Below are positions 8,031 through 64,000 of a stretch of DNA of 64,000 bases, piece after piece (the stretch's first letter is position 1; each line of letters starts with the position of its first letter). The notes beneath the pieces were generated by a model that searched no databases, was not told the DNA's origin, and saw only the letters and a program-made list of their open reading frames with translations. Source of the DNA: Hydrolagus colliei. Its lineage: Eukaryota. The translations under genes were made by a program, and so were the position numbers. The stretch lies in the NCBI GenBank assembly GCA_035084275.1, contig CM068775.1, positions 1,240,001 through 1,304,000 of the forward strand, given 5' to 3'.

Positions 8031-8097
8031 AGTATGTGTATGGGACTGTGTCACTGTGTATACGGGGCTCACAGCATTAACTGTCAATACAAAAACC
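8031..8097 (+). other. IGHD: IgH D segment (TATACGGGGCT, 8059-8069) with 12-bp-spacer RSS on both sides, cluster 1
   Basis: 5': AGTATGTGT (8031-8039) + 12 nt + CACTGTG (8052-8058). 3': CACAGCA (8070-8076) + 12 nt + perfect ACAAAAACC (8089-8097). All three frames are open. Confidence 0.92.
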
Positions 8098-8436
8098 CTT
8101 GAACACCAAACCAGATAATCTCTCCCACTGCTGGCGTGTGTGGGTTCCAATTAACGTGAGGAGATTTGATATGTTTATAATGGGGCCTAACACTGAGTAA
8201 TTTACCTGATTTTAATCGACATAAAAACATAAAATATAATCTTGAATCTGTGGGTGACAAGTGAAGGTGTTTGACAGGAACATTGCAAACTGGCAAAGAT
8301 ACAAACATTTAACAGCTAAACACAGAGCTGTGCAATTGTTTTCAGAACATTACAGAACTATACGGTTCCCGGTATTTAGTTTGGGGAAATCACCATTTAC
8401 AATAATAAGGTGTTTGTGTGGCCGGCCCTCACAGCA

Positions 8437-8523
8437 GGTTATTGCAGTGATCAGCACACTGACTGTAGCACTGTGACTACCTTGACTGCTGGGGACAAGG
8501 CACCATGGTGACAGTGACTAACG
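8437..8523 (+). other. IGHJ: IgH J segment (8476-8523, YLDCWGQGTMVTVTN) with 23-RSS, cluster 1
   Basis: GGTTATTGC (8437-8445) + 23 nt + CACTGTG (8469-8475); WGxG motif; phase-1 donor G|GTAAGA at 8524. Confidence 0.95.
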
Positions 8524-8902
8524 GTAAGAAACAAACACTCACTCACAATGCTGAGTTTGGATTTATATGTTTATTTTATTCTCTTTAACAGCTATTTAAT
8601 TTAATGACCTGTGAGTTGCCAGGGCTATCTCAGAGTTTATTGGAAGTTAAATTCATTTCACTGCTGTTGCTTTCAACAGCCACTGTTGATTTAAGGATTA
8701 TTCTGTCCATGTTTAGTTCATTGCTGGTGATATTTGTGGTGGTTAGTGACTGTACAGCTGAAGTTACACTGATGGACTTTCTGCAATGTCTGATCACGGT
8801 GACTGGCGGCTGCTGATTTTGGGTATAATCAGGAATTGTATAAAAGTGTTTGAAACTTTGCCCACATGTTGGGAATCAGGGCCTGAATGTTGTGGGATGA
8901 GC

Positions 8903-9660
8903 GACTTTAGCTGTGACCTGAAACTGGGAAGAGAGGGGATGAGGCAAAGGGAGTGAGGAAGGGAGTTCCAGAGCCTTGGGACATAGTGGCTGAAGGCACG
9001 GCTGCCGAGGGTGGAGTGGAGAATTCGGGGGGACATGGAGGAGGCCAGACCCAGTGGAGTGAAGGCAGCGGGTGCTGGTTTGGGGAGAGCGGAGATCAGA
9101 GAGATAAGAAGGTGAAGAGGAATGGAGAGATTTGAATACAAGGGTGAGGATCTTGAAGTCGATCCTCTCTGGGACAGGGAGCCAGTGAAGTCTGGCAAGG
9201 ACTGGGGTAACGGGCAGCGAAGCTTGTAGCGGGTGAGTATGCAGGCAGCAGAGTTTTGGATTATCTGGATTTTGTGGATTGTGGTCGAGGGGAGACCGAC
9301 GAGGAGGGTGTTGCAATAGTCCAGCTGAGAGGTGACAAAGGCGAGGAACAAGGTTTCAGCGGCTTTTGTGGTGAGGTATTGCCGGAGACGGGCGATCCGT
9401 CAGAGGTGATAGAAGGCAGTGCTGGTCATGGACCAGATGTGGGGGAGGAAGGTCAGTTGGGGGTCGAACCTGATGCCAAGGTTGCGCACAGGTTTGGAGA
9501 GATTTAGGGGCCAGGCCGGGAAGGTGGAGGAGCTGAGAGCCGTGTGAATGGAGACATGGACGATTGCCAAGGAGTATGGCCTCCATCTTGTCGACATTCA
9601 GCTGCAGGAATTTCACGCTCATCCAGCCCCTGATATCTGACAGACAGGCTGACAAAACAT
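8903..9660 (-). mobile_element. L2-clade LINE 3' RT fragment
   Basis: ORF fragments CLSDIRGWMSVKFLQLNVDKMEAILLG and LDYCNTLLVGLP...IQNSAACILT. Confidence 0.8.
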
Positions 9661-9927
9661 CAGGGGACTGGAGTCACAAAGTGAAGTGGTCATTAAATCA
9701 CTATACCTTGATTAAGAAATGTTGGGTCATTATTTTGAACTCTCGGGATTGAAAATTCCAACCATTACAGTACTAGTAGGCCAAGATAGTGCAGTATTGT
9801 GAAAGAGTTCAGGAAGTGTAATTTTTTTTCAATTTTTAATTAAAACAAATAATTTGCCCCCAAAATTTCATGTTGTGCAATCATGCAGCTCGATGATTAG
9901 AGCCGTCACCAAGTAAGCCAGTGACCT

Positions 9928-12514
9928 AGAATCATAGAATCATAGAATTTTACGGCACAAAAGGAGGCCATTCGGCCCATCTAGTCTGTGCCGGCTCTTT
10001 GAAAAGAGCGATTCAATCCCATTGCCCTGCCCGCTCCCCATAGCCTAATAGACCCGTTCTCCCTAAATAAAGATCTAATTCCCTTTTAAAAGTTGTTATC
10101 GAATCAGCCTCCACCACCTTTTCAGGCAATGCATTCCAGATTCGAACAACTCGCTGAGTGAAAAAATTTCTCCTCAGCTCCCCTCTACTGCGCCTTGAAA
10201 CTATTTTAAATCTGTGACCACGAGTCACAGATTCGCCCACGAGTGGAAATAGTTTTTCTCTATTTGCCCTGTCGAAACCCCTCATGATCTTATAAACCTC
10301 TATTAGGTCTCCCCTCAATCTTCTCTGCTCCAGAGAGAATAACCGTAGCCTATCTAGCCTCTCCTCATAGCTGAAGTCCCTCAATCCTGGCACCATCCTT
10401 GTAAATCTTCGTTGTACCCTTTCCAATGCCTTCACATCCTTTCTGTAGTGTGGTGACCAGAATTGAACACAGTATTCCAGCTGAGGCCTCACCAAAGTCC
10501 TATAGAGGTTAGTCAGCACTTCCTGACTTTTGTACTCTATACCCCTATTTATAAAGCCTAGTATCCCATATGCCTTCTTAACAGCCTTGTCTACCTGTCC
10601 TGCCACCTTCAACGAGTCACTAACACAAATCCCCAGGTCTCTCTGTTCCTTCACACCATTTAAAATTGTACTATCTAGCCTATATTGCCTCCCTTCATTT
10701 CTTCTCCCAAAATGCATCACCTCACACTTCTCTGCATTAAACTTCATCTGCCATGTGTCTGCCCACTTTACCAATTTGTCTATATCCTCTTGCAGATGGC
10801 TACTATCCTCCTCACTGTTTACTATTCTCCCTAACTTAGTGTCATCTGCAAACTTGGAAACTGTACTCCGTACACCCAAGTCCAGATCATTGATGTAGAT
10901 TACAAACAGCAATGGTCCCAAAACCGATCCCTGTGGCACACCACTGCTCACTTCCCTCCAATCTGAAAAACAGCCGCTCACTACAACTCTCTGCTTTCTG
11001 TCTCGCAGCCAGTTGTGGATCCACGCTGCCACTGTCCCTTTTACGCCATGGGCCTTTAATTTCATAATAAGTCTCTCATGTGGCACTTTGTCCAATGCCT
11101 TTTGAAAGTCCATGTAAACTACATCGACTGAGCTACCATTATCCACCCATTCCGTTACCTCATCAAAAAATTCTATCAGATTTGTAAGGCAAGATTTGCC
11201 TTTAACAAATCCATGTTGACTGTCCTTTATTAGCCTATATCTTTCTAAGTGAAGATCTACCTTGTCCCTGATTATGGACTCTAGAAGTTTGCCCACTACC
11301 GACGTTAGACTGACTGGTCATTAGTTACCAGGCTTGTCCTTCTGCCCCTTTTTATACAAGGCAGTAACATTAGCTATCCTCCAGTCCTCTGGCACGACCC
11401 CTGTGTCCAAGGAAGATTGAAAGATCGTGGCCAGAGTCCCTGCTATTTGCTCCCGTGCCTACTTAGTAACCTAGGGTGCATCCCATCCGGACCAGGTGAC
11501 TTATCCACCTTGAGCGACGTCAACCTTTTTAGCACTTCCTCTCTGGTTATAATTATTCTATCCATTTCTCCTACCCTCTCCTCTAATACCATGGCATTGG
11601 CTGTATCATTTTCTTTTGTGAAGACAGAGGCGAAGTACTCATTCAGTACATCAGCCATGCCCTCTGCCTCCACAATGAGATTTCCTCCTAGGTCCCTAAT
11701 TGGCCCCACCCTCTCCTTGACCAACCTTTTACTCTTAATATGTTGGTAAAAAACCTTAGGGTTCCCCTTAATCTTACTCGCTAATTGTTTTTCATGCAGT
11801 CTCTTTGCCCCTCTAACTTCCTTTTTTAGTTCTATCCTACACTTCCTATATTCTGCTTGGTTCCCTTCTGAATTTTGAGCCTGACACTTATCATAAGCCT
11901 CTTTTTTTTGTTTATTTTGGCCCCGATTTCCTTAGTCATCCAGGGAGGTTTGGATGCCTTACATTTCACCTTTGTGGGGATGCTTTTGACCTGTGCCTGA
12001 ACTATCTCCTCTTTGAACGCTGCCCACTGCTCGTTAGTTGTCTTACCTGCCAATTTTTCTTTCCAATCCACCTTGGCTAGGTCCCACCTCAACTCATTGA
12101 AATTAGCCCTTTTCCAGTTGAGTGTCCTCACCTGTGATCGTTCCTTATCCCTTTCCATAATTATTCTGAATCTAACGATATTGTGGTCACTATTCCCTAG
12201 ATGCTCGCCTACAGAAACCTGTTGAACTTGCCCTACCTCATTTCCCAAAACTAGATCCAGCAATGCTTCTTTCCTCGTTGGACTGGAAACATACTGATCA
12301 AGAAAGTTGTCCTGCACACACTTCAGGAATTCTTCTCCCTCCTTGCCCTTTACTCTACTATTCTGCCAGTCTATGTTGGGATAGTTGAAGTCACCCATTA
12401 TCACTACTCTATTAGCTCTGCATTTCTCCGTGATACGCTTGCAGATCTGCTTGTCTATCTCCTCCCCACTATTTGGTGGTCTATAGTATACCCCTAACAG
12501 TGTAACTGCACCTT
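9928..12514 (-). mobile_element. CR1-clade LINE, 5'-truncated, ORF2 (partial endonuclease + RT) disrupted
   Basis: ORFs 11832-12566 (YYRPPNS, MGDFNYPNIDW, LLDLVL), 11443-11724 and 10013-11296 ([39 protein letters not shown]); (ATTCTATG)n tail at 9928. Inserted into a SINE that is uninterrupted at about 48760-48860. Confidence 0.95.
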
Positions 12515-12771
12515 GTTTGATTCCCAGCATGATGAAACATTTTACAATTTTCCTCGTGCCACACACCTCTGTTTACCTAGCAGTGAACAATTCTCATGTG
12601 AAAACACTATTGTTTATTCACTGGTCTGGAACTAATTGCATTAATTACATTTATTAATTGTTCAAGTTGTACTTAGCATTCACTATAAGTACAAATTTCT
12701 TTCACTCTGAGCTCAGTGAGTTCATTGAAGCCTCCACTTCAGGAGGAAAACACCAGAGTGTAAAACAGGGC

Positions 12772-12841
12772 ATGGAATTTCCAACACTATATGCTATAGT
12801 AGCTATTTACTACCCCATTCTGGTAGCATTTGGAATTCCGG
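12772..12841 (+). CDS. GPCR gene 1, coding exon 1 (MEFPTLYAIVAIYYPILVAFGIP, first half of TM1)
   Basis: ATG 12772, phase-1 donor G|GTAATT at 12842. Paralogous exons at 38471 and 49069. Confidence 0.85.
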
Positions 12842-13034
12842 GTAATTCTATTTGTTTTCATGGTCTGGCAATTGTGAAGAGACTAGTTCAATTGAACTTT
12901 TGTATAGTGGCTTGTCATGTCTACTCGAAATCTCAAATCAGTTCAAAGAATATACGGCAAAGTCAAATGACTTTGTGTTTGTGGGTGAAAGGCGATAGCT
13001 AATTGTGTATTTCTGTGCCCTACAAACTTTCATG

Positions 13035-14446
13035 GACCAAACGTCTGGTCCGTTATTTCCCGCCAAGCCGGAGTATTCAATCCACGCTGATCGAAACCTG
13101 TCATCATACTGGCAGACAGACTTGGTACTTTCTTGATGGCAGGCGGATATTTTATTCCAATCAATTTGAGCTGGACCTTGGTTGCAAAGCCAGGTTTGGA
13201 CAGCCGTCCATCCTGCTTCCAAGTTCCCACCATCAGGTCCCATTGCCACAGTTACTTGTTTTTGCAGCAAACGCGCATCTCAACCCGTGGCCATCACAGA
13301 CAATATTTGGACCCTGTCTTGAGGGTGTAAGCGGTAGATCATATGCAAATGATTGAGCTGCTCCCAAATTTTTATGGCACCTTTCCGGGGATCAGATAGT
13401 GATTTGGACCAATTGTCGATCTTTTCTGGATCGGCTGGAGCATGGATCGACACCAGTATATCCCGAAAAGCCCCGGGTACTGTGACATTAGCTTGTCGAC
13501 CTCGATGCACCGCTGTCACTTGTGGCACACGTGGGGGAGGGAGGACAGTTGAGGGTAAAACAAGACACCCTGGTTCCTGACTGACTTCGAGAGTTGGAGA
13601 GTGCAGTGTTGTGATTTCCGATCCCGAGAATACAATACAATGATCCAACAATTCTTAATAAAGGTATAGAGATTTCATGATTTTAAACAATTATAAATGA
13701 TAGAATAAAAGATTCATACTACCAGTCCCATTTAGAATACAATGCAGGATTCAGGCTGTTACACAATATGTCAGGTTCAGGCTTCTCACAATACTCACTC
13801 CTTCTGACTTTCCATCTCTAACTGACCCTTCTCTGCCTGTAAAACAACCATTCTGAACCATGATCCGCTCCAGTAGATCTGGACAACAGTGGCAGGCTGG
13901 AGATATCGGTTTACCCTGAGACATTCCCTAACTGTTGTGATGAGCCACTCTTTCTCTCCTACCTCATTCTCCACCATAACTAAGTCAGCCAGTTGATCAC
14001 TTGGAAATTGTCCAGAAGCGATGTCAAAACCAGACTATCTAAAGGCCAGAGTTGTACGGAGTTGTTTGCCTCCCTTCTTTTCCCAGACCTTGAGATGGCT
14101 CTCCTGCTACTCACTTGGCAATTGCCCAAATGAGTACAATTCTTTGTGCCTTTGTTAATTGAGTCCTCTGTCCCTATCTATATCTTGAGCTGTTCTCCTT
14201 CAATTCTTTATTTATCACAGAAGCTACTGATGTTATTGTGCCCCTTGGATTATTGGCATGGACCAGTATCCAAGATTGTCTCAGCGCAGGGGAATGTGCA
14301 CCTGGTGTTTTGGGTAGACAAGTTGTTTCTCTCTCTTTTGCTCAAGGTTGCTGACCATGCCTGTTTTGTGGATAGATGGTTTTAATTGGTGCCTGATTCG
14401 AACTAACTATAATTAATTTTTAATACAGTACCTCCATATCCCAACA
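13035..14446 (-). mobile_element. Endogenous-retrovirus-like gag remnant inside the GPCR1 intron
   Basis: Minus ORFs WSKSLSDPRKGAIKIWEQLNHLHMIYRLHPQDRVQIL and QIDWNKISACHQESTKSVCQYDDRF resemble capsid/MHR. Absent from the paralogous GPCR2/3 introns; GPCR3 homology resumes at about 14447 (=50510). Confidence 0.6.
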
Positions 14447-14792
14447 GCAGCCTTGAATGCCGATGCTGCCAGTGCCTGTGTTGTGGAGTTGCTGACATGA
14501 GTTAATCAGGTGGATATTCAACTAGGTGCATGGGAAGATTTCTTAAGGATTGGGATGATAGTTGCTGTTATGAAGGAGACGGGAATGATGCCGGATAAAA
14601 GGGACAGGTTGACTGTATCAGCAAGTAGTAGGGTAAGGTGGTGGAGCTCTGAGGTAAAGAGACGAGTCGGGATGGGATGCAGGGAGTGGACTTCATGGAG
14701 GATACGGTTGTGATGACAGAGGATGGGGAAACATGTTCTCCCCATCCTCATCCATTCTGAAGTTGTAGAAGTAAGTCAATCGACCGACCGAC

Positions 14793-14823
<31 letters not shown>

Positions 14824-15330
14824 AACTTACAGTTATATATTGCCTTTCATGTCAAGAGGATGGCCCAAGGCACTCTACAGTTTGGTAGGGACAAGAGCAT
14901 TTGGGGGAGGGGTCGGGTCAGGATGAAGAAGAATAGCAAAATTAACTATATTTGTGGGCAAAATGTGACAGCCAAATTATGCCCAGGATGGATGGGTAGA
15001 TGATGGGGTGTGGGAGGGCGGTGTGTGGGGGCAGAAGTTGGAAGGGTGGTGACAGCTACGTGGATTCCCTTGATTTTGTTCTCGAGATCATCCAGCATCT
15101 CCACACAGTGGGAGTTGTAGGAGAGGATCTGTGATATGGACGGGGAAGGGTGGAGGAGCTGGTTTGTTGAGGAGAACAGGAAATTGTGGTTGTCCTGGAT
15201 TATCCTGGAGTAGAAGTATGATTTGCTGGAGACCAGAGCAGAGAGGTAGTTTTTGATGTGCCAGATATGCCAGTGGACCATTAGACCTGATCTTTGAGCA
15301 ACTGGAGGTGGCTGGTGAACTAGGGTGAGG
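14447..15330 (-). mobile_element. Degenerate L2-like fragments shared with the GPCR2 and GPCR3 introns
   Basis: Aligns to about 40400-41000 and 50510-51440; SFKTAxIxPILKK-like remnants. Confidence 0.6.
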
Positions 15331-15580
15331 TTCGAGAGTAACACTTTGGAAAGAATCAGGAGAAATCATTTTGCTGATTGTTTAATGCAGGCTACCTTAC
15401 AACAAGGCCACAATTCAAAACCGTATGAAAGGTTTGCTGAAGGTTTGAGATATGGACAATTTTCTAAAGTAATTGAATCAACTCAAAGAATAAACAACCA
15501 AATATGACACACCCTTAAACTCCTCATCTCACACCTGTATTCATGTGAATAATTTTTCCTATTTTCTTTCCTTCACACAG

Positions 15581-16512
15581 TTAATTTGCTGGCGATTGTG
15601 ATCCTGTCAAGAGGAAACTGTGGCCTCTCAATGTGCGTCACTCGCTATCTGGAGGCCATGGCAGCCGTGGATCTCCTGGTTGTCCTCGTGGATGTGTTGT
15701 TAAACCAAATTAACAATCTGTATTTCCCATTAAATTTCTTATTCTACACTCCAGTGTGTAGTGTTAGAGTGGTGTTGATGAGTGCAGCATTGCTCATGTC
15801 TTTGTGGTTCACTGTTGCTTTCAGTTTTGACCGATTTATCGCCATTTGCTGCCAAAAGCTGAAACCAACATATTGCACGGAGAGAACGGCCACAGTGGTT
15901 ACTGTAACTCTGTCTGTTTGTAGCTGCGCAGTCAGCATTCCTTGTTACTTTATATTTGATCCTCAGTTCACAGTTAACAATACCCCGTGGTACTGTATCT
16001 TCAAACCAAACATTTATACTTTGCTCACCTGGAAATTATACGAAAGGTTTATCCGTGTTTTTAATCCACTGTTTGTGTTTGCTTTGATTTGCCTGTTCAA
16101 TGCTGTGATTATCAGACACATTCTGATGGCCAGTAAAGTCCGCAGGAGGCTTCGGGGTCAGAGAAAAGCTGACAAAACAATTGATCCCGAGTTGGAAAAC
16201 CGAAGAAAATCCATAATTTTACTGTTCGCCATATCAGGCACTTTTATAATTTTGTGGATAACATATGTTCTACATTCCTTCATATGGCAACTTTCCAATT
16301 TTAATTATAGCGAAACATTGGTCAATAACACCCGATATATTGTCCAAGAATCTGGACTCATGCTTCAAAAGTTGAATTGCTGTACAAACACCTGTATATA
16401 TGCATTAACTCAGAAAAAGTTCAAAGAGGAGTTTAAGAAAGGGTTAGTTTATCCCTTTGATATCATTGCTAAATTAATTATAAAATACCAGAAAAAATCA
16501 TTAGGAAAGTAA
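15581..16512 (+). CDS. GPCR gene 1, exon 2; class A 7TM receptor, GPR139/142-like; spliced product about 333 aa
   Basis: Acceptor TTCACACAG|TT gives GIP-V-NLLAIVIL in frame. TM2 D (AVDLL), ECL Cys, TM3 FDRF, TM6 W, TM7 NTCIY, helix 8 KFKEEF; no stops. Family assignment is from recalled similarity, not a search. Confidence 0.92.
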
Positions 16513-51530: not shown

Positions 51531-54180
51531 CAAGGCCGTACGCAGGGGGGGTGCGACGGGTGCGTACGCACCCCCCCCCCCCCCAAATTATAAAAGGTCC
51601 ACATTTTCCGGGGTAGAGAATTGCATTTTTTTAAATCAAATTTAAATACCAAGTAAATTTATTGAACATTTGTGCAACAATCAGTTCTTCAAAACTATGT
51701 ATAAATTATAAATACACATCTTTGAATGATTTAGTATTAATATAAAATTATCGAGTCGCACACCAGAATCGGCGTCTACCCCAAAACATACCGCGTCGAT
51801 ACACCAGTCCATGACGCGGCGAGTCTGTGACTCGTGATTGGATAAACAATAGGCGCCAAGACTCAAATCCTCGTTTGGAAATCATCCCGTAAACAGCCAC
51901 AAGGGGCAGCACCAATTCTGGAGTTAAAATCATCTTTTCATCTGATCACCGTAAGTAAAAATGACTCAAGTTTTGAGAGGTGTGACTGTAATGCCGGCAA
52001 ACAATGACAACATATTTACAAGATTCTGAGAAATTAAAGCTTTTGAGAACCCAACAAAAAAGTTATATGTGTCTGGACGGGAATGCCTATCTTTAAAAGA
52101 AATACTCATGGACGTAGACCTAATGCTTTAGCGCCTATTCCACGTGGTGTGTCAATCGGAAATCATCCCGTATACAGTCACTACATAAAAAGGTAGCACC
52201 ACTTTGTGGAAGCTGAAATCGTATTTTAATCTGATAATGTTAGCAATTGATAATAGTGCCTTAGTACATTGTCAGACAGCTCAGAGGCTTCACAGAACGT
52301 ACTGTAAAGTGGCCAGTTTTTGCCCAGGATTGTCCCACAAACACCGATGGAGTGAGTCACCGATTTTATTTGGGGGCGTTTGTTGGCCAGGACAACAGGA
52401 GAGAGACTTCCCTCCGCTTTTCGAGTAGTGTCAGAGGATCTTTTCACATCCATCTAAACAGACGGATCAGACCTCGGTTCAGCATCTCAACCAAAAGAAC
52501 AGCCTCTAACCCCCCCCCCCCCCCCCCCCCCCCACAGCACCACATTGAAGTGTCAGCTTCCTCTGTGTGATACCGAGTGCCGACGTGGGGTTTGAACCCA
52601 CAACTTTCTGACTCAGAGGCCAGAGTGCTATTCACTGTGCCAGGCGACTCGCCAGGTGATGCTGCTGTCTTCTATCACCTGTGGGAAACTTTCTTTCCCT
52701 CCTACTCAGTGCCTCTGAATCTGAAGACATTCCCAAGGTCGAGGTTGCATATCTGACTGATTGACAACTGAGATTTATTTTCAGGGTTTGTGGGCAGTGT
52801 CACGTAATTGGCTATAACTTAAAGGATTGTTAACCTGCACCTGTTAGAGTTGAGGTCCCCAGAACTGCTGCCTCACACCAGCGGGATATAAAGGACAGGT
52901 GCAGTCGAGTCTGCAAAGCAACAGCTCTTCCTACACAAATCTCTTCAACGTGACTCCTCTGAAAGTCACTCTTTCTCTCTTTGAATAATAATATAATCCG
53001 TGCATTTCATGTAGCGAGGTAGGTTAGGGTCGGTCTACCTCGTGTTCTGTGACCGTGCAATGGTTCCCATAGGATAGTAGCACTATGGACAGTTTCCTCC
53101 CGGCTTCTCCAGCTATGTCCGCTAAACCTAAGACGCCTCTGCAGTAATGTCTGTGATACCAGTGTGGTGGTGTACCATATAGCTCACTATTTGTCAGATG
53201 CTGTCGCCAGTAAACGTTCAGGGCGTCTCTTAGAAGCCTGGTATATACCTCACGAGTCACCTAATCTCCTGGGTTTGCCTAAGTGTCCAGCATTCTGCTC
53301 CGTATAGGAGCGACTTTCAGCCCTCGCGTTAATGCACATTCATTATAATATGGTAATCGATATTGGTAGAGCGGTTGACGTATTGGCTTCAAAGCGACCG
53401 AGGCGTCTCGAATACGGAACGCTATTAAAGAATTAATTTCCCCTCCCTTATTTTTTCAAGTATTTTTTCGTCAGATCAGTATTGCTCGATGCCTTTCATT
53501 TTGATTCTAAATAAATAAATAAAAACTAACTACACTATTGCTCACAGTTCAACGATATTTTCAGGATAATGCTGATAACAGGCTTGTAACACGTGTGAAT
53601 TAACTGTTTGACACTGATTTTCAGTTTCTGTATATTTTCTTGTCTTTTATAAAATTTGCTTTGCTGGAATATCTGAGCACATCATTCATACGTTACTCTT
53701 ACATTATTGTTCATTACAGTCCGAAAGAAATTTAGTCTTAGGATAACAATGCAGAACAACTTATTAATTACCGTCAATCTGTAGTTTATGATCATTTTCT
53801 CTATACGCATACATTTATCAAGCATTCGTCATTGTACTGTGTTAATTGGATTGTAATTTACTTTATCGTTCGCATTCCTTACATCATCGAGTCAACAATC
53901 GTGTTGGCTTTTATCGGCGAACACATTCTACCTTCCCAATTAGACGGACTACCGGGGAAAATATAAACACTGAATAAATAATGATGCTCTTAAACACCAA
54001 GGGCATGAAACATTTACCGTTCATATTGGATCTTCTGAATCGATTAAATAAGACCTCAAACTGTGCAAAACGTCGGAGACCTCGAGGGGGCCTCGGGGGC
54101 AGCCCCCAAGCCCCCGGCCATTGATGGTCCCATCACTAGCAATTCGCACCCCCCCATTAAACATCCTGCGTACGGCCCTA
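51531..54180 (-). mobile_element. Non-autonomous hAT-like DNA transposon, copy 2, in the GPCR3 intron
   Basis: Reverse complement of 5364-8006. Flanked by the duplicated target CTACCTTA (51523-51530 and 54178-54185); the empty site GGCTACCTTACAACAAGG is at 15390-15407. Confidence 0.9.
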
Positions 54181-54366
54181 CCTTACAACAAGGCCACAAT
54201 TCGAACCTGTATGAAAGGTTTGCTAAAAGTTTGAGATATGGACGATGTTCGCTAGGAATTGAATCAACTCAAAGAATAAACAACCAAATATGACACACCC
54301 GTAAGCTCCTCATCTCACACCTGTATTCATGTGAATAATTTTTCCTATTTTCTTTCCTTCACACAG

Positions 54367-55298
54367 TTAATTTGCTGGCGATTGTGATCCTGTCAAGAGG
54401 AAAGTGTGGTCTTTCAAAATGCGTCACTCGCTATCTGGTGTCCATGGCAGGCACGGATCTCGTGGTTGTCCTTGTGGATGTTTTGTTAAACAATATTAAC
54501 AATCTGTATTTCCCATTAAATTTCTTATTCTACACTCCATTATGCAGTGTTAGACTTGTCTTTGTGGCTGCAGCAATGCTCATGTCTTTGTGGTTCACTG
54601 TTGCTTTCAGTTTTGACCGATTTGTCGCCATTTGCTGCCAAAAGATGAAACCAACATATTGCACGGAGAGAACAGCCACAGTGGTTATTGTAACTCTGTG
54701 TGTAATTTGCTGCTCAGTCAGCATTCCCTGTTACTTTTTATTTGCTCCAAAGTTGATAATTAACAATACCCCGTGGTACTGTATCTTCAAACCAAACTTT
54801 TATACTTTGCTAACCTGGAAATTATACGAAAGGTTTATCCGTGTTTGTAATCCACTGTTTGTGTTTGCTTTGATTTGCCTTTTCAACACTATGATTATCA
54901 GACACATTCTGATGGCCAGCAAAGTCCGCAGGAGGCTTCGGGGTCAGAGAAATGCGGAGAAAACAATTGATCCCGAGTTGGAAAACCGAAGAAAATCCAT
55001 AATTTTACTGTTCGCCATATCAGGCAGTTTTATAGTTTTGTGGACAACTTATGTTGTGCATTCTGTCATATGGCAACTTTCCAATTATAGTTATAGCGAA
55101 ACATTGGTCAATAACACCCAATATATTGTCCAAGAAACTGGAAACATGCTGCAAATGTTGAATTGCTGTGCAAACACCTGTATATATGCTTTAACTCAGA
55201 CTATGTTCAGAGATGAGTTTAAGAAAGGATTAGTTTATCCCTTTCATATCATTGCTAAATTAATGATAAAACAGCAGGAAAAAACGGTAGGAAAGTAA
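54367..55298 (+). CDS. GPCR gene 3, exon 2; class A 7TM receptor, GPR139/142-like; spliced product about 333 aa
   Basis: Acceptor TTCACACAG|TT; intact ORF with FDRF and NTCIY. Confidence 0.92.
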
Positions 55299-55859
55299 TT
55301 GGCGACAAACACGGTTCAACTTCACCTACATTGGTGACTATCTTCACAAACAGGGAAACTTTCCAACATTACTGTAAGCTCTGTAGGTAATGTATTAAAT
55401 TAATGTATCAATTATATTAACAATAGATATTTGAGATATGTGATTGGTCGGTCGCTTCTGTTGGGATCCGGTACAAGTGTAGTTTTGTTGTTGTTGTTGT
55501 GACTGGCTTCACAATGATGGGAGCTGGTTGTGACCGGCTTCGCAGAAGAGACAACAAACTGGTTAAGGTTGACAAACCATTTCATTATCGGTGTGTTTCC
55601 CATGGAGAGGTGGTCTGTAGGTGGAGAGACAGCTGAGCAACATTTGGTTTTGCAGAGGAACACTCTTGCAAAAGAAACTGGGTGAAAATATCACGTGATG
55701 AACATAAAAGGGGGGATCGATTTGAGGATCAAAGAAGAAAGAAAAGAAGATTGTGGAACTTGGAGTCGCCATATTGCAGCTTCTGAACAAGGAACAGTCA
55801 AGACTAAGTCTTACACAACTGTCAACACCTTTACTGGTGCTCTCAATCTATGTAACTGT

Positions 55860-56480
55860 AGAGAATCATAGAATCATAGAAATATACGGCACAAAAGGAG
55901 GCCATTCGGCCCATCTAATCTGTGCCAGCTCTTTGAACAGAGCAACTCAATCACACTGCCTAGCAGTCATTCCATAACCTAACAGACATGCTCTTCCTAA
56001 ATCGAGATCTAATTCTCTTTTAAAAGCTGTTGTGGAATCTGTCTCCACCACATTTTCAGGCAATGCATTCCAGATTCGAACAACCAGCAAAAAATTCTCC
56101 TCAGTTCCCCTCTGCTTCGTTTTGAAACTATTTTAAATCTGTGACCACCAGTCACTGATTCACCCACAATGGAAACTGTCTTTCCCCATTCACCCTGTCG
56201 AAACCTCTCATAATCTTATAAACCTCTATCACATCTCCTCTCAATCTTCTTTGTTCTAGAGAGAATAAGCCTAGCCTTTCCTCATAGCTAAAGTCCCTCA
56301 TTCCTGGTACCTTACTAATACATCTCCTCTGCACTCTTTCCAATGCCTTAATATCCTTCCTAAAGTGTGGTGACCAGAATTGTACACAGTACTCCAGCTG
56401 ATGCCTAACCAAGTCTTACAGAGGTTAATCAGAACTTCCTGACTTTTGTATTCTATATCCATATTAATAAAGCCTAGTAT
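55860..56480 (-). mobile_element. CR1 LINE 3' fragment
   Basis: [26 protein letters not shown]; AGAATCAT tail. Confidence 0.9.
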
Positions 56481-56859
56481 CCCATATGCTGTACTGTGCT
56501 GTACTGGGATATTGTTTTGCTGTTTGAAAGGGCTGCTGTGTCTGAATACCTCAATACCTTTTGGTGGACATTAAATTAAACATAAATTTGACATTATTCC
56601 TCCTTCTCTTTGGCAACATTGGTTGGGTCAACTTAAATCCTTGTGAGCTGTGGGTCATTACGAAAGCATTGTTGTGATGCATACTTTTAATTAGTTATAA
56701 ATATTACTAATCTGAATTCACGTTCATGTTTTTTTGTACTCTTGTGTCATTCTGTATTTCACCAGCACATCACAAGACTAACTAACCCTTAAATTATGAA
56801 GAGATATCAATGATGTACTGTTTCCTTACAAATGTAGTAACAGTGACAACAAGATTAAA

Positions 56860-58360
56860 TTGATAGAGCGCCGTTCATGTCGGAAGGACGTCACAAGGCA
56901 CTGAACAGTCAGCATTCGGGAACCAAGCAAAAGGGAGGGGTGGGATAGAGGCAAGAGGAGGCAGAGAATTGGGAGCACAGCTGGAGGTACAGAGTGTGGG
57001 ATGTGTGAGACAGGGTGGCTGCAGTCGGACAGCCGGTGGCATCTGCCATGGTGAGCGCAATGGAGAATTTGAAGATTGGGTCAGAGGAAGGCTGTGGAAA
57101 GGTCAAGCAATAATAGAAATCAGAGCAGTTGGAGGGAGGGGAGGTTTGATTGGGAATAGTGGAGTGTGGGGGACAGGCACAAGAGCATTTTGGGGAAGCA
57201 GTGCTATGACTAGGATCAGACAGTGTTGGAGGGTGGGGGAGAGGTGGGCGATGGTTGTCAGTGAGGCAGGGTTTGCCCTCTGGGCTGGTGTGGATCATAA
57301 CGGCTGTTTTCGCAGTGAGTCCAGGGCTGGGAAATTCTAATGAAGTGGGTGTGATGACATCACACGGCTGCCGGTTTCCGGTTGGTTGAGGCCTCGGTGA
57401 GTCAGTGATCTTGGTGATGGTGCTTCAGACCAGCTGAGGTGAATCCCTGGTCATCTTTGCGGCCTCAGGCCTCAAGTTGGTTCTTGTGGCAATTGAGGTT
57501 GAAATCCACATCGATAAAGTGGCCAAAGCCTCGGGTCAGCCTGTCCATAGGTCCTCCTTGCCTGTGAGAAGCTCCAGGAGCTGGTTCTGATCATGATTCA
57601 GGTCCTGCTCGACTGTGACCATGGAATTCTCTACCACAGGAGGCTGTGGATGCTCAATCCTTGAATATATTGAAGATTGAGATTGATAGATTTGTAAAGG
57701 ATAGAGGGATTTAGGGATATCAGGATAGGTATGGTAAAGGGAATTGGGTTAGTAGATCAGCCATGATCTTATTATGTAGTAAAACAGTCTTGAGGGGCTG
57801 AGTAGCCTACACCTGGTCTTATTTCTTATGTTATTATTTTCATGTTTGGTGTTTTTTACTGAAGTTACACCCGCACCAAGATCCACGACCACATCACCTC
57901 GCCCGGATCCATTGGCTCCCCATCCCCCAGAGGATCTAGTTCAAGTTCCTCAGCCTCAATTTCAAGGCCATTCATGGACTTTCCCCTCCTATCTTTGTGA
58001 CATACTATGAATCTGCCCTCCCCTACTTTCAGCGGGCTCCAGCCTGCTCCATATCCCTCACCTGTCATGCTCTACCATTGGTGGTTGGCCTTAAAGCCTC
58101 TCTCCCCCCTCACTCTGGAACCCATTCCCAGAGTCCGTTCAACTCGCTCCCTCGCACACCTCCTTCAAGGCCGATCTCAAGCCTGTCCACTGAATGTGTC
58201 TTCTGCTGCCCTCCCAACTCTATCCCACCCCTCCTAACTCTCTCCCTCCTGTCTTAACTCTCTCCTGTCCCTTTGAACTCAGTCCAGACCCTTCCCACTA
58301 CATTGGCTCAGGTCCTGACCCTGACTGTTCAGCCCCTTGGGACGTCCTCCCGATATGAAA
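56860..58360. mobile_element. Mixed L2/CR1 fragments
   Basis: L2-type 3' ends at about 56860 (minus) and 58350 (plus); CR1 3' piece at about 57640-57830. Confidence 0.55.
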
Positions 58361-61300
58361 TGTTCTCTATAATGTCACTTTGTTGTTGTGGTGGCCGCCC
58401 AGTAAAAGTGTGTCTGTGACACCGGGCATCACAGAGCACATACTGTGGGCACACACTGCAGTTACACCTGGTGGCCACACCCGCTGACTGTGGCGCTGTG
58501 GCGTCCTGCACAGAGAAATCTCAACAGTGACAACAACAACAAAATGACATGTTTAAAGCACAGAGTCCTCCCACAGGAGCCCTCCCAATGGTCATTGTGT
58601 ATCAAGACTGAGATTGATAGATTTGTAAAGGAGAGAGGAATTCAGACACAATGGGCTGAATGGCCTCCTCCAGTGCTGTATAATTCTATGATTGAACACA
58701 TTTTATCTATTAATTTTACTTTTTATTCCACCATTACTAATTTACCAATCACCGTCAGTTGAGATGACCTGACAGCTGCTGTTGTTGCTGTTGGAGTGAA
58801 GGCCAATAATGTATGAAAGGTCAGGCTGTGGGCTCTGTGGTGTGAGGGCAGGAAGCTGATCACTGATTGACTGCAGACAATCACAGCTGCTTCCTGACAA
58901 TTGTGCTGTGAGTTTCTGCCCCACCTGAAGACAGCTTGACTCATCCTGTGTATTTCCAGCAAGAAGTCTTTAGATACAAACAGCAGCATCTTGTGTAGGG
59001 TTTTGCAAATGAGCTGATCTGCAACTTAAACATCTGTTCCATAACATCTGTAGACTCCTCTGAATTTCCTGTCAACTCAAAGTCTTGAATTGTAAGTATG
59101 AAAAATAAACCCCAAACAATATGTAAATACTTCCATATTTCTCTTGGTTGATATGTAAAGCCAGCATCTCTTATTGATATTTTAAAAGCTAAAAATACTA
59201 AAGGCGAAACAAAAAATGTGTTGACAGGCACATTCAGGCGATAAAAAATCATATCACAAGCTCAGTGTAGGATGTGCTGCATGTTATTTTCTGGGTATTT
59301 AGTCTGTACATCTGTGCCACATTACACCAGCGATACACTGGAAAATATTAACTGGCCACTGTTCAGATACGCTATCACTTGATGCCACTGTCAGAATGCA
59401 ACTCTTTGCAATCACACTTTTTATGGAGTGAACAGACTCAGGAGGCCGTAGACAGAGTTATTTTGTGAGGTATTATTATCAAGCGTGTGGAGGAAGGAAT
59501 CTTGTCTAACGTTTTGCACTGACTTGAATGAAACCCAGGTTTGTGGACTTCCAGACTGTGTCTCAAGGAATATACTGTAAACTGGATTGACTCCATATTT
59601 GTCAGCGAAACGCGGCAGCCAATTGCAAACAGCAGTATCCCAAAATAGTCTTGGATTGAAATGACCAATTTATTTTTCGGTTTCTTTGGGATGCATTATG
59701 TGGATTAAGGAAACTTGCCCAAGCCATCACCGTGCCTGGAATTGAAACATAGGTCACTCGTTTGAAAGTCGAGGGCTCTAACTATTGAGCTACAGGACTC
59801 CACTGTAATTAGTTTCCTGACGTGTGGGATTGATGTTGTGCTCTGACAGGTTTGCTGTAAGATAGGAGGCCTTGTAGATCTTGTACAGGTTCCAGATCCA
59901 GTGCCCAAAGCAGAATTCAGGAATCAGTGGTGGATCCTCATGTCTCAGTGTGGAGTCCTATAGCTCAGGGGTACACACTCAACTGCACTCATCTCGCAAG
60001 CCAGTGACCAAGGTTTGATTCCTGGTAGTGCAAAAACCTTGGGCAAGTTTTCTTACTCCACACGTCTGGTAATAATCCATCAAGATAATAAAATAATAAT
60101 AAATGACTGAAACCATTTCTGATTCAAGCCTCAAGTTATTTCTTCCCAGTTTCCTTCTCCCCCTTGTCCTGAAGGAGTGTGGCTGGTCTGACATTACACT
60201 GGGCTCCCACTGCACCAGCAGCCCTCCCCACCTGGCTTCTCACCCCAAGAGAACATTTCATGTCTGGCTTGAAATCATGAGCCGCCACATCAAACCGTTC
60301 ACCACCATTGCACTATTTCATAACCAATCAAGCTTGTGATTACAGTAAATGCAGCGCCTGAGAATAGAGAGGTTTATTATTATAAGTGGACTGAAGGCTG
60401 AATTCATTCCCATTATCTTCCAATCCAGAGATAAATACCGTGGGCATGGTTGACACTGACACAGACAACAAGATAAACCTCCTCAATGGTAAGAGAACAG
60501 AGAGTGAAGTAGGAGTAAATGGAAAACACATTGAGAAGTGATCAAATAGAAACAACAAGATTAAAATTGCCAGGAACATAACAAGTTTATTTTAATATAA
60601 ATATTAAAAAATCATACAATTATAATTTTTTTAACATTAATATATCCACATCAAAATGCCAGTAGAGGTAACAAGAGGATTCACACCTTCATTCCCATAT
60701 GTGATGTGAAATCAGGATTGGAAGAGCAGTAAACAGGGGATAATCTACAGATCAGAACATCGCTAAACCACAGGAAATAATACATATTTTAATTAAGTCA
60801 CAATATTAATTATTGCTCACAAAATACACAGTCACTACCTTTACAATTCATTCTGTGATGTTCCTTGAGATGATTCATCAATGTAATGAGGTATTGTTTC
60901 AAATGCAAGGTTTATGATATTAACAATTATTATTATAAGAATAAGAATTGCAGCACGTCAAAATACCACGGTCCATCTGGATTGCCTTCCACCATCCTGG
61001 CTGTCACACACACATGCCATGTCCTAAACAATACACACAATCAATATATCTTATTGATTTGGTAAAACAATCTGCTTCCACCATCTACTTAACTTTAACA
61101 GTAGCTCAGTGAAATTGTGTTCCCACAGATATGTGTTGGACTTATTGCTCTACTACACAAAGACACAAGCATAGACACACACACAGTCACTCACTAGCAT
61201 AGAAATACACACAAACAAATACACACACATACGTTAAACAAAACAATCCACAAGGCTTCAGGGTCAGTGCTGGGGCTAATACTATTGACACTTATGAATT

Positions 61301-61555
61301 TGAATTCATATTCAAAAATGAAGTTGCTGTCAATGCCGAATGTAAAGGGCACAATTATTGATCTGTGCAGGTCAGAGGGAATGTGAGGCGTGACTCCCCT
61401 CAGTCCTGTAGCTATTGGTCCATTCTCCAAACACCTGGCCCCACTGCCCCTTGTTAAATAGCGGTCACTGGGGACTGAGGCCATCTGTCCATCCGGCAGA
61501 TCTTTGTCCCTCGGTTATTGGGCTCAAGAGTCAGTTCTGACAATTGCCCAGAAAC

Positions 61556-62714
61556 ATGAGGTCCCTGATATCTCTCAGTCTGTTGCTGGCTCTCTTCTCG
61601 CGTTGAGAAGTCAGCTCGTCTGACTTGTACACATAATAGTTATCTGCAAACCTGCACTATGCTTTCCTTAACCTTTGGTCAGCACTCATGAGCCTGTTTA
61701 GCAATAAGAGGAAAACAGGAGCGATGTTATGACTTTTAAGACATACCATGGTTTTGTGTTATTGTGTCTGGCGGACATACCATTGTTCGGTTGTTTGTGT
61801 AAACTGACGCCTATACTGCCTTGTTGTTGCATAGAAAGCTCTAGGCTTGTTTATCATATTTTACTACAAGGTTATGATGTTATTGTAAGCTCCAGGCTTC
61901 GAGGCTTCGAGGCCTATCTTGTTATTAGAAAGCTCTAGGCATATCTTATTATTGTACGCTATAGCTGGCTTATGTCTCATTGACTACAAGGCTACGATGT
62001 TTTTATGATGCAGTTGCAAGACCATGTTGTTTATAGCCCGGCATGAGTCATGTGGCGAAAAATGTATAACTACCCATGTAAAGGTTGCTCTGTGTGTGCA
62101 CTTGGAGTAGACGGACGACAGTCTGTACCTAAGGTGTACACCGCTTTGCAAACGCTTAATAAACGTTGTTGAACTACACACCCGAGTCACATATTTGTGA
62201 ACAGAACCACCAACCAAGGTACTGAAACGAACCAGTTTCACACCGTGAGTTCTATTATTGGGACAAGTCTGACTGTGTGTGTGTGTGGCTGTGATTCTCT
62301 CTGCAATGTCACAGAGCCGGGATATCTCACAATAATTAATCTTTGGTCATTTGTTCTTTACAGGTGTCCAGGCCGATGTGGTGCTGACACAGCCGTCGTC
62401 TCTAACCGGGAAGCCTGGCCAGGCCCTGAGACTCACCTGTAGAACCAGCGGGTTTGATCTCAGCAAATATGGCATGAACTGGGTCTGGCAGGTTCCTGGG
62501 AAGTGGCTGGAATGGCTGCTCTACATTTCGTACACATCTGCGTCCAACAGTCGTTACACACCTGACATTCAAAGCCGTGTCACTGTTAACAGTAATAATT
62601 CCAATAACATCATCGATCTGAACATCAAAAGTCCAACAGTTCACAACACCGCCATCTCTTACTGTGCAAGTGACTCGCAGTGAGAGGCAACTGGGCTGGT
62701 CTCCTACAAATACA
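61556..62714 (+). pseudogene. IGHV: IgH V gene C: leader 61556-61601, V exon 62364-62675 (open frame), 23-RSS 62676-62714; probably non-functional
   Basis: Both Cys and the FR2 Trp are present, but the leader donor is split by an LTR, the heptamer is CGCAGTG, and WVWQ, KWLEW, NTAISYC deviate from consensus; nonamer ACAAATACA at 62706-62714. Confidence 0.93.
61604..62242 (+). mobile_element. Solo LTR (639 bp) inserted in the V-C leader splice donor
   Basis: TG...CA ends; 4-bp TSD GCGT (61600-61603) / CCGT (62243-62246); AATAAA at 62158; internal imperfect repeats. Absent from V-A and V-B. Confidence 0.85.
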
Positions 62715-63124
62715 CGAGGGGAGGAAAGGCAGCCCCTCCCACCCTAAACTGAAGGGCAGTTATGGTGTCAATGCTGTGTCTGTAGCAAAGATTAAAGGAA
62801 AAGCTTAGAATGGATTCCTTATCATTCCAAACCAATACAGTGAACGGTGGTTTGATGGGGGGTGAATGAGCTGCTTATTTGTGCTGTAATATTCTGTGAT
62901 TTCAGCTGGTATGTGACACTGTGCTGTTTGAGGCGGGAAGCATTGCGATTGGAGACTGACTAGATGACAGTTCACAAATATCCTCTTATTACCAGCCGTT
63001 GGACATATTTGTTTTCTGTTTCTGTGGCTGTGAAGAAAGTGTTAGACAGACGCTGTGCCATGCCACAGGAAAATAGTCCATTTCAGTGAATGTTGGCAGC
63101 CAGTATAGAGCAGACACTGAGGTC

Positions 63125-63191
63125 AGTATGTGTATGGGACTGTGTCACTGTGTATACGGGGCTCACAGCATTAACTGTCAATACAAAAACC
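63125..63191 (+). other. IGHD: IgH D segment (63153-63163) with 12/12 RSS, cluster 2
   Basis: Identical to 8031-8097. Confidence 0.92.
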
Positions 63192-63529
63192 CTTGAACAC
63201 CAAACCAGATAATCTCTCCCACTGCTGGCGTGTGTGGGTCCCAATTAACGTGAGGAGATTTGATATGTTTATAATGGGGCCTAACACTGAGGATTTTACC
63301 AGATTTTAATTGACATAAAAACATAAAATATAATCTTGAATCTGTTGGTGACAAGTGAAGGTGTTTGACGGGAACATTGCAAACTGGCAAAGATACAAAC
63401 ATTTAACAGCTAAACACAGAGCTGTGCAATTGTTTTCAGAACATTACAGAACTATACGGTTCCGGTATTTAGTTTGGGGAAATCACCATTTACAATAATA
63501 TGGTGTTTGTGTGGCCGGCCCTCACAGCA

Positions 63530-63616
63530 GGTTATTGCAGTGATCAGCACACTGACTGTAGCACTGTGACTACCTTGACTGCTGGGGACAAGGCACCATG
63601 GTGACAGTGACTAACG
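63530..63616 (+). other. IGHJ: IgH J segment (63569-63616) with 23-RSS, cluster 2
   Basis: Identical to 8437-8523; donor G|GTAAGA at 63617. Confidence 0.95.
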
Positions 63617-64000
63617 GTAAGAAACAAACACTCACTCACAATGCTGAGTTTGGATTTATATGTTTATTTTATTCTCTTTAACAGCTATTTAATTTAATGA
63701 CCTGTGAGTTGCCAGGGCTATCTCAGAGTTTAGTGCAAGTTAAATTCATTTCACTGCTATTGCTTTCAACAGCCACTGTTGATTTAAGGATTATTCTGTC
63801 CATGTTTAGTTCATTGCTGGTGATATTTGTGGTGGTTAGTGACTGTACAGCTGAAGTTACACTGATGGACTTTCTGCAATGTCTGATAACGGTGACTGGC
63901 GGCTGCTGATTTTGGGTATAATCAGGAATTGTATAAAAGTGTTTGAAACTTTGCCCACATGTTGGGAATCAGGGCCTGAATGTTGTGGGATGAGCGACTT

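What the first reader, a model, noticed from the sequence alone, without database searches (positions are those of the whole stretch)
8031..64000. IgH V-D-J segments and a GPCR gene form one co-duplicated cassette; GPCRs intact, Ig segments all damaged
Seen: three intact two-exon 7TM genes alternate with IgH pieces, in the order V-upstream block, V, (D, J), GPCR-upstream block, GPCR. Both upstream blocks are duplicated colinearly (43100-45970 = 58390-61555; 36245-38470 = 46309-49068). Every V is disabled by a different lesion, no CH exon is recognisable, and no GPCR has a stop or frameshift. Established: cartilaginous-fish IgH loci are V-D-J-C miniloci. Inference: the amplifying unit is Ig+GPCR with selection on the receptor. 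Either Ig clusters hitch-hike on a GPCR expansion, or the GPCR uses Ig regulatory or recombination machinery. I know of no description of this linkage but could not search.
Basis: partly seen in the sequence, partly recalled or inferred. Interest (0 to 1): 0.85.

Follow-up and report, generated by a model that had tools for sequence, protein, structure and literature searches.

The report
Dead antibody segments beside duplicated receptor genes
In a chimaera-type (elephant-shark-like) genome, broken antibody heavy-chain gene pieces lie among three intact copies of a hugely expanded orphan-receptor family and were copied along with them by ordinary local DNA duplication, so the linkage looks like passive hitch-hiking, not a new immune-receptor system.

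Summary
The window holds three intact two-exon rhodopsin-type GPCR genes (G1-G3). They alternate with IgH pieces: three VH segments, two copies of a D flanked by 12/12 RSS, and two copies of a JH with a 23-RSS. No constant-region exon was found by three methods. All three V segments are defective.

The anatomy argues against a selected "Ig+GPCR cassette". Units B (36244-46308) and C (46309-62536) are a simple head-to-tail tandem duplication. Its junction cuts V2 in CDR2, with ACA microhomology. V1 and V3 share a crippled RSS heptamer (CGCAGTG) and YYC->SYC, so the V was probably already dead when it was copied.

The GPCRs belong to a very large chondrichthyan "probable GPR139"-like family. In the five other loci I fetched, this family sits in arrays without any Ig. 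Five shark IgH clusters had no such GPCR within 10 kb.

The GPCR reading frames have been kept open by selection: neutral expectation is about 1e-5, and dN/dS is 0.5-1.0.

Best reading: a constant-less IgH pseudo-cluster was trapped in a duplicating GPCR array. This is ordinary genome dynamics with low novelty. The genome-wide test within the source species could not be run.

The parts
12772..16512 (+). GPCR gene G1 (GPR139-like). Exon 1 is 12772-12841, exon 2 is 15581-16512; 333 aa, intact.
38471..42218 (+). GPCR gene G2. Exon 1 is 38471-38540, exon 2 is 41257-42218; 343 aa, intact.
49069..55298 (+). GPCR gene G3. Exon 1 is 49069-49138, exon 2 is 54367-55298; 333 aa, intact. Its intron carries a 2.65-kb DNA transposon.
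28110..29274 (-). V1 patch: about 330 bp of promoter, leader (ATG at 28918), V exon 28753-28442 with three in-frame stops, and RSS23 at 28441-28403 with heptamer CGCAGTG.
45640..46308 (+). V2: promoter, leader (ATG at 45971), and V exon from 46136. It is truncated in CDR2 at the tandem-duplication junction 46308|46309.
61556..62714 (+). V3: leader 61556-61599; a 644-bp solo-LTR-like insertion at 61600-62243 (TG...CA ends, about 4-bp duplication) at the leader/donor boundary; V exon 62364-62675; RSS23 at 62676-62714 with heptamer CGCAGTG.
63125..63191 (+). D segment (coding TATACGGGGCT, 63153-63163) with 12-bp-spacer RSS on both sides.
63530..63616 (+). JH: RSS23 at 63530-63568 and coding 63569-63616 (YLDCWGQGTMVTVTN), followed by a GTAAG donor.
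8007..8907 (+). Second D-J copy, 98.6% identical to 63101-64000. D with RSS at 8031-8097, J RSS at 8437-8475, J coding at 8476-8523. It lies 4.2 kb upstream of G1 exon 1; 2.6 kb of that distance is a LINE insertion.
36244..46308 (+). Tandem-duplication unit B: GPCR-upstream block, G2, spacer, V-upstream block, and the 5' half of V.
46309..62536 (+). Tandem-duplication unit C, colinear with unit B. It is enlarged by later insertions and continues into the undisturbed V 3' half, D and J.
51534..54177 (+). TIR DNA transposon (ends GGCCGTACGCAGG / CCTGCGTACGGCC, target duplication CTACCTTACAA) in the G3 intron.
5365..8006 (-). Second copy of the same DNA transposon (98.7% identical). It abuts the D-J copy and has no target-site duplication.
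9928..12516 (-). LINE insertion (endonuclease plus reverse-transcriptase ORFs) in the block upstream of G1.

Best explanation
A constant-region-less IgH V-D-J pseudo-cluster (an 'orphon') lies inside a tandem array of GPR139-like orphan GPCR genes in a holocephalan genome; Callorhinchus milii is the closest match. Repeated local segmental duplications, with units of about 10-16 kb, non-homologous junctions and later transposon insertions, copied whatever lay in the interval. Purifying selection kept the receptor reading frames open, while the already non-functional Ig pieces decayed or were cut by the breakpoints. The Ig-GPCR linkage is therefore physical and passive (hitch-hiking), not functional.

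Shown: the gene structures, the lesions, the duplication junction, and the ORF-maintenance statistics.
Inferred: the order of events, and the absence of any functional coupling.
For: (1) Units B and C are colinear over their whole length. The junction reads V...TACACA|GAGGTGTG..., which joins V CDR2 to the start of unit B with ACA microhomology. The V2 'lesion' is therefore the duplication breakpoint itself.
(2) V1 and V3 share the heptamer CGCAGTG, the nonamer ACAAATACA and YYC->SYC, so these defects predate their split.
(3) No CH exon is found by Pfam on ORFs, tblastn or tblastx. In real shark clusters, Cmu1 was seen downstream of V/J inside the same ~20-kb loci: about 6.5 and 9.3 kb past J in L007 and L005, and about 5 kb past V in L006.
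(4) The GPCR family is very large: 2125 hits in the 90%-identity clusters, the top 120 essentially all named chondrichthyan sequences (a few carry no source name), and 109 clusters at 50% identity with E<=1e-30. Members form dense arrays without Ig. L002 has three in 21 kb. L001 and L008-L010 have no V, J or C.
(5) Five shark IgH loci, about 108 kb in total, have no family member within 10 kb.
(6) The three CDS have no indel in 999 nt and no stop. Flanking non-coding DNA at 84-91% identity has about 6-13 indels per kb. A neutral simulation gives P(no stop in all three) = 0.005 and P(no frameshift) = 0.002-0.012.
(7) No RSS lies beside any GPCR exon, and there is no conserved upstream ORF or acceptor.
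Against: - The V gene plus about 300 bp of promoter is 94-99% identical among the three copies, while the adjoining flanks are 67-88%. I attribute this to gene conversion, but constraint on some function is not excluded.
- With transposon insertions removed, J lies only about 1-1.7 kb from the G1 start codon, so shared regulation is physically possible.
- The context sample is small (10 loci), and only two of them are from C. milii.
- No genome-wide test and no expression data were available.
- The window ends 384 bp after J3, so what follows there is unknown.
Confidence: 0.8

Rival explanations
1. Functional coupling. The GPCR genes have co-opted Ig promoter or enhancer elements (or are lymphoid receptors), and the Ig remnants are retained because they regulate the receptor. 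The selected unit would then really be Ig+GPCR.
For: The V-plus-promoter island is 94-99% identical among copies against 67-88% in the flanks. J lies about 1-1.7 kb from the G1 ATG once the LINE and other insertions are discounted. The J donor and the GPCR exon-2 acceptor are both phase 1.
Against: - The duplication breakpoint cuts a V, and D-J is absent from unit B.
- V1 is inverted and lies more than 9 kb from any GPCR.
- Family members elsewhere lack Ig neighbours.
- The frame upstream of exon 1 has stops and indels in G2, and no conserved acceptor.
- A phase match happens by chance one time in three.
- A J-to-exon-2 splice would delete most of TM1.
Confidence: 0.05
2. A still-functional IgH minilocus whose constant exons lie outside the window, or far downstream beyond the inserted GPCR. 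On this reading the Ig pieces are not orphans.
For: The J and D segments and their RSS are well preserved. The V3 exon is an open frame, and a 98%-identical V is on record as a predicted protein, P0121. The window ends 384 bp after J3.
Against: - Downstream of J1 there are 55 kb without any C exon.
- Both V segments that still have their 3' end carry a CGC heptamer.
- V3 has lost canonical R38, G and Y residues, and has a 644-bp insertion at its leader donor.
Confidence: 0.07
3. Assembly artefact. On this reading, mis-joined or falsely duplicated contigs create an apparent interleaving of Ig and GPCR sequence.
For: Two stretches are about 98.6-98.7% identical: 5365-8006 to 51531-54179 (inverted), and 8007-8907 to 63101-64000. 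The second ends at the window edge.
Against: The first is a TIR transposon with a clean target duplication in G3. The Ig-GPCR adjacency recurs in copies that are 84-92% identical, each with private insertions and substitutions, which an artefact would not produce. There are no N runs.
Confidence: 0.05

Closest known systems
Cartilaginous-fish IgH cluster (minilocus) V-D-(D)-J-C
   Same: VH with a split leader and 23-RSS, D with 12/12 RSS, and JH WGQGTMVTV with a 23-RSS and splice donor. The order and spacing V-0.4 kb-D-0.4 kb-J match. VH is 62-66% identical to C. milii and Heterodontus VH.
   Different: No constant exons. Only one recognisable D. The V RSS heptamer is mutated. All V segments are defective. 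A GPCR gene sits where the J-C intron and Cmu1 lie in the shark loci L005 and L007.
Immunoglobulin orphons (V/D segments dispersed outside functional loci by segmental duplication, e.g. human IGHV/IGHD orphons on chromosomes 15 and 16; from my own knowledge, not tested here)
   Same: Non-functional, constant-less Ig segments copied passively together with unrelated neighbouring genes.
   Different: Here the host is a holocephalan, the neighbours are a tandemly expanding GPCR family, and the set includes D and J with good RSS.
Human GPR139 (PDB 7VUG and relatives)
   Same: It is the closest solved structure (E 1.8e-13 against about 1e-6 for the next GPCRs). The public annotation name for relatives is 'probable G-protein coupled receptor 139'.
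   Different: The match is only distant. In the 50%-identity library, hits fall abruptly from 40-57% identity to about 28-31%. The family has hundreds to thousands of copies in chondrichthyans, against a single-copy neuromodulatory receptor. DRY reads DRF and NPxxY reads NTxxY in G1-G3.
Tandem arrays of fast-evolving chemoreceptor-type GPCRs (OR, TAAR, V1R) that grow by birth-and-death duplication
   Same: Dense tandem arrays, with one gene per 7-10 kb in L002 and in the window. Pairwise dN/dS is 0.5-1.0 with the ORFs kept intact. The cytoplasmic half is conserved and the outer half is variable.
   Different: There is no evidence for a sensory function or sensory expression. The gene has a conserved phase-1 intron after residue 23.

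Membership tests
Chondrichthyan IgH minilocus | VH gene segment with leader intron and V-set fold | tested here: met
   Pfam V-set E 2.6e-8 for the V3 ORF. tblastn with C. milii VH gives E 3e-32, 3e-29 and 2e-19 for V3, V1 and V2.
Chondrichthyan IgH minilocus | Recombination signal sequences obeying the 12/23 rule at V, D and J | tested here: inconclusive
   Spacers are correct: V 23, D 12/12, J 23. The V heptamer is CGCAGTG in both V1 and V3, and the CAC triplet is normally essential (own knowledge).
Chondrichthyan IgH minilocus | JH with the WGxG motif and a splice donor | tested here: met
   YLDCWGQGTMVTVTN followed by GTAAG, present twice.
Chondrichthyan IgH minilocus | Constant-region exons (C1-set) within a few kb downstream of J | tested here: not met
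   Searches are all negative. Control loci L005, L006 and L007 show Cmu1 by tblastn downstream of V/J (about 5-9 kb); in L004 only the record's own gene call shows C1-set exons.
Chondrichthyan IgH minilocus | Open, functional V reading frame | tested here: not met
   V1 has three stops. V2 is truncated. V3 has an insertion at the leader donor plus non-canonical W, W and S residues.
Rhodopsin-family (class A) GPCR | 7tm_1 profile over all seven helices, intact ORF | tested here: met
   E 4e-19 to 5e-22, profile positions 4-260 of 260. Spliced ORFs are 333-343 aa.
GPR139 orthologue | Orthology to vertebrate GPR139 (single copy, high identity) | tested here: not met
   Only E 1.8e-13 to human GPR139. 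It belongs to a separate multi-copy clade. No tree was built.
Chondrichthyan 'GPR139-like' expanded clade | High similarity to annotated members, and a shared two-exon structure with the intron after about residue 23 | tested here: met
   74% identity to C. milii P0001, and E<=1e-92 to 120 members. In L001, exon 1 and exon 2 are seen 2.4 kb apart. In L002 and L008-L010 the tblastn match starts at residue 23-25, and the called genes in L008-L010 span 2.9-8.3 kb.
Tandem segmental duplication | Head-to-tail colinear copies with a single novel junction joining the unit end to the unit start | tested here: met

The most novel reading that the evidence does not exclude
The Ig remnants are not mere passengers. 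On this reading, the V-promoter island (kept 94-99% identical among copies) and the J-proximal region act as regulatory modules for this sub-clade of GPR139-like receptors. That would give a lymphoid-expressed GPCR lineage born inside an IgH cluster of a holocephalan.
Probability: 0.04. Interest if true: 0.7.

Novelty: new member of a known kind. Interest (0 to 1): 0.25.

Why it matters
As it stands, this is a clean worked example of two things. First, Ig 'orphon' pseudo-clusters can arise and spread in a cartilaginous fish simply by lying in the path of a duplicating gene array. Second, a duplication breakpoint can itself be the disabling lesion.

It is useful for annotating chondrichthyan Ig loci, because V-D-J sets without a constant region should not be counted as clusters. 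It also serves as a caution against reading function into co-duplication.

The more interesting by-product is the GPCR family itself. It is a very large, fast-turning-over, chondrichthyan-wide 'GPR139-like' expansion, and I found no paper on it in the held library. Cartilaginous fishes have very small canonical olfactory-receptor repertoires (PMC6368271, PMC11979771), so the tissue expression of this family deserves a look.

Tried and rejected
(1) An Ig-V-GPCR fusion by splicing J to the GPCR. The J donor and the exon-2 acceptor are both phase 1. However, the frame upstream of exon 1 is closed in G2, it is shifted by indels between copies, and there is no conserved acceptor. Splicing to exon 2 would remove most of TM1. 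Rejected.

(2) RAG-signal involvement in the GPCR spread. No RSS lies near any GPCR exon or unit boundary. The only extra RSS-like hits (22040, 60000) are isolated and weak.

(3) Remnants of destroyed GPCR copies around V1 (27294-27963 and 29365-29663). These matches are either not shared by the other units or fall in a multi-copy repeat, and tblastn finds no GPCR coding remnant. Not counted as evidence.

(4) Looking up the window's own G1 and G3 proteins to obtain flanks beyond the window. Neither is on record.

(5) Literature searches for the Ig-GPCR linkage or for the GPR139-like expansion in cartilaginous fishes. Nothing relevant turned up.

(6) C. milii VH proteins from the database have no contigs attached, so IgH neighbourhoods in C. 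milii itself could not be fetched.

(7) A canonical Ig octamer in the V promoter. Only 7-of-8 matches were found, which is uninformative.
Full report
**Source and general character**

The window has no N runs and is about 65% self-similar at blastn level. It is rich in transposons. These include a LINE with endonuclease and reverse-transcriptase ORFs at about 9928-12572 on the minus strand, LTR-retroelement pol fragments at 1398-3583 (minus) and 33325-35165 (plus), short multi-copy repeats that may be SINE-like, and a TIR DNA transposon.

The best protein matches are to Callorhinchus milii. The GPCR is 74% identical to P0001. The V3 exon is 98% identical to a predicted protein, P0121, that carries the same odd substitutions, and 65-66% identical to other C. 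milii VH. Interspersed repeats match C. milii loci at 75-87%. The source is therefore a holocephalan, probably C. milii or a close relative.

**The GPCR genes**

Three long ORFs on the plus strand hit Pfam 7tm_1 over the whole profile. Each starts behind a polypyrimidine-CAG acceptor, in the second half of TM1. tblastn with the N-termini of relatives found a 70-nt first exon 2.7-5.2 kb upstream of each ORF, reading MEFPTLYAIVAIYYPILVAFGIP with a GTAATT donor. The spliced products are 333, 343 and 333 aa with no stop or frameshift. The same split after about residue 23 is seen in relatives from C. milii, Heptranchias and Heterodontus. No other GPCR fragment exists in the window.

**The GPCR family**

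- A word-indexed search gave 2125 hits. All 120 listed had E<=1e-92, and essentially all that carry a source name are chondrichthyan. Most are named 'probable G-protein coupled receptor 139'.
- An exhaustive search of the 50%-identity representatives gave 109 clusters with E<=1e-30. Identity then drops abruptly to about 28-31%.
- Human GPR139 is the nearest solved structure, but only at E 1.8e-13.
- This is therefore a large, lineage-specific GPR139-like clade, not GPR139 itself.

**Selection on the GPCRs**

- The three CDS are 90.6-92.2% identical, with pairwise dN/dS of 0.53-0.84 by NG86 and up to 1.05 by ML.
- Adjacent introns and upstream blocks are 84-91% identical, with about 6-13 indel events per kb. 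The CDS have no indels in 999 nt.
- I placed the observed substitutions at random on the consensus CDS. All three copies stayed stop-free in only 0.5% of 20,000 trials. The expected 4-6 frameshifting indels give P(0) of 0.002-0.012.
- The reading frames have therefore been maintained by selection. The amino-acid sequence is only weakly constrained, or is diversifying.

**The Ig pieces**

Three VH segments, two copies of one D and two copies of one JH are present.

- V1 (minus strand) has three in-frame stops.
- V2 ends in CDR2.
- V3 has an open V exon, but it reads WVWQ for WVRQ, GKWLEW for GKGLEW and ISYC for YYC. A 644-bp element with TG...CA ends and a duplication of about 4 bp (solo-LTR-like) sits at the last leader codon and donor.
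- V1 and V3 share the RSS CGCAGTG-23-ACAAATACA and the Y->S change. These defects are therefore older than the V1/V3 split (7% divergence).
- The D has 12/12 RSS. The J has a good CACAGTG heptamer with a 23 spacer and a GTAAG donor.
- RSS-like matches exceed chance: 5 against 1.0 expected for each spacer, with 0 of 100 shuffles reaching 5.

**No constant exon**

- The 150 longest stop-to-stop ORFs, all of at least 80 aa, gave one V-set hit and no C1-set hit.
- tblastn with the C. milii Cmu1 domain from P0130 found nothing.
- tblastx with the J-C regions of three shark clusters hit only LINE fragments and the J.
- In real clusters, Cmu1 lay a few kb downstream of V/J: about 6.5 and 9.3 kb past J in L007 and L005, and about 5 kb past V in L006.
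- In the window, that interval after J1 is occupied by G1.

**Duplication anatomy**

Unit B (36244-46308) and unit C (46309-62536) are colinear block by block. Each contains the GPCR-upstream block, exon 1, intron, exon 2, a spacer, the V-upstream block, the leader and the 5' half of V. Unit C is enlarged by private insertions.

At the base level, V2 reads ...CTCTACATTTCGTACACA|GAGGTGTGGTGAGTAAGG. The left part matches V3 up to 62536, and the right part matches the first bases of unit B at 36244. The two sides share ACA. This is the single novel junction expected from a head-to-tail tandem duplication of the interval from 2.2 kb upstream of the GPCR to mid-V. Three things follow:

- The V2 truncation is the breakpoint itself.
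- D-J was not part of that unit.
- The only complete gene in the unit is the GPCR.

Unit A (8007-16604) carries D-J followed by G1. Its upstream block is interrupted by the LINE. The D-J stretch is 98.6% identical to 63101-64000 and runs to the window edge, whereas G1 is only about 91% identical to G2 and G3. A younger duplication therefore probably extends beyond the window.

The stretch 5365-8006 is an inverted, 98.7%-identical copy of a 2.65-kb TIR transposon. The other copy sits in the G3 intron with a clean CTACCTTACAA target duplication.

V1 is an isolated, inverted patch of 1.15 kb.

**Is the linkage general?**

- Five loci around family members had no V, J or C by tblastn: C. milii L001 and L002, Heptranchias L008, and Heterodontus L009 and L010, about 122 kb in total. 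L002 shows three GPCRs in 21 kb.
- Five shark IgH loci had no family member within 10 kb: whale shark L003, bamboo shark L004-L006 and cloudy catshark L007, about 108 kb in total.
- The sample is small, and IgH neighbourhoods in C. milii itself could not be fetched.
- Within the window, the three adjacencies are copies of one ancestral adjacency, so they count as one event.

**Interpretation**

The data fit a constant-less IgH pseudo-cluster trapped inside a birth-and-death GPCR array and copied passively. I put this at about 0.8.

The main loose end is that V plus about 300 bp of promoter is 94-99% identical among the three copies, while the flanks are 67-88%. Gene conversion among V segments is the ordinary explanation, but it was not tested.

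The alternatives each get about 0.05: functional coupling, a functional cluster whose constant exons lie outside the window, or an assembly artefact. The reasons are given in their own sections.

I also tested the idea that J could splice in frame to the GPCR. The phases match, but there is no conserved upstream frame or acceptor, and splicing to exon 2 would remove most of TM1.

**Literature**

Searches for the GPR139-like expansion in cartilaginous fishes, or for any Ig-GPCR linkage, found nothing relevant. The catshark sensory-genome paper does not mention the family (PMC11979771).

**Verdict**

Novelty is low for the linkage. The GPCR expansion itself is the more promising lead.

Noticed in passing
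12772-16512, 38471-42218, 49069-55298; loci L001, L002, L008-L010: The GPCRs belong to a very large chondrichthyan-wide 'probable GPR139'-like clade: 2125 hits, 109 clusters at 50% identity with E<=1e-30, and dense tandem arrays. It has a conserved phase-1 intron after about residue 23. I found no paper on it in the held library. A chemoreceptor-like role is speculation.
   Followed up: partly
45683-46308, 61270-62536, 28442-29230: The V gene plus about 300 bp of promoter is 94-99% identical among V1, V2 and V3, while the adjoining flanks of the same duplication units are only 67-88% identical. This suggests gene conversion, or a later spread of a roughly 1.15-kb V patch.
   Followed up: partly
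5365-8006 (-) and 51534-54177 (+): Two 98.7%-identical copies of a 2.65-kb TIR DNA transposon (ends GGCCGTACGCAGG...). The G3-intron copy has an 11-bp target duplication. The other copy has none and abuts the D segment directly, so a transposon-associated rearrangement probably removed the V of that unit.
   Followed up: partly
8007-8907 vs 63101-64000: The D-J stretch is 98.6% identical between units A and C, while the neighbouring GPCRs are only about 91% identical. The similarity runs into the window edge, which implies a younger duplication (and probably a fourth GPCR) beyond 64000.
   Followed up: no
9928-12572 (-): A LINE with long open endonuclease (246 aa) and reverse-transcriptase (434 aa) frames is inserted in the block upstream of G1 exon 1. 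It looks young.
   Followed up: partly
31977-33320: A 1.3-kb C/T-rich tandem-repeat block with 59.5% GC and strong C skew. It mimics a 447-aa proline/serine/leucine 'ORF' and is not a gene.
   Followed up: no
G1-G3 exon 2 (e.g. 41257-42218): The receptors read FDRF where class A GPCRs have E/DRY, and NTCIY or NTFIY where they have NPxxY. The C. milii relative P0001 keeps NPCIY.
   Followed up: no
L003 (Rhincodon typus, 10207-10530): The whale-shark VH hit aligns continuously through the J motif, so it looks germline-joined. No Cmu1 was detected in the 10 kb downstream. This may be another constant-less IgH element.
   Followed up: no
1398-3583 (-) and 33325-35165 (+): Two inverted fragments of the same LTR-retroelement pol (RNase H and integrase-like ORFs), 84-87% identical, flank the first half of the region.
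   Followed up: no
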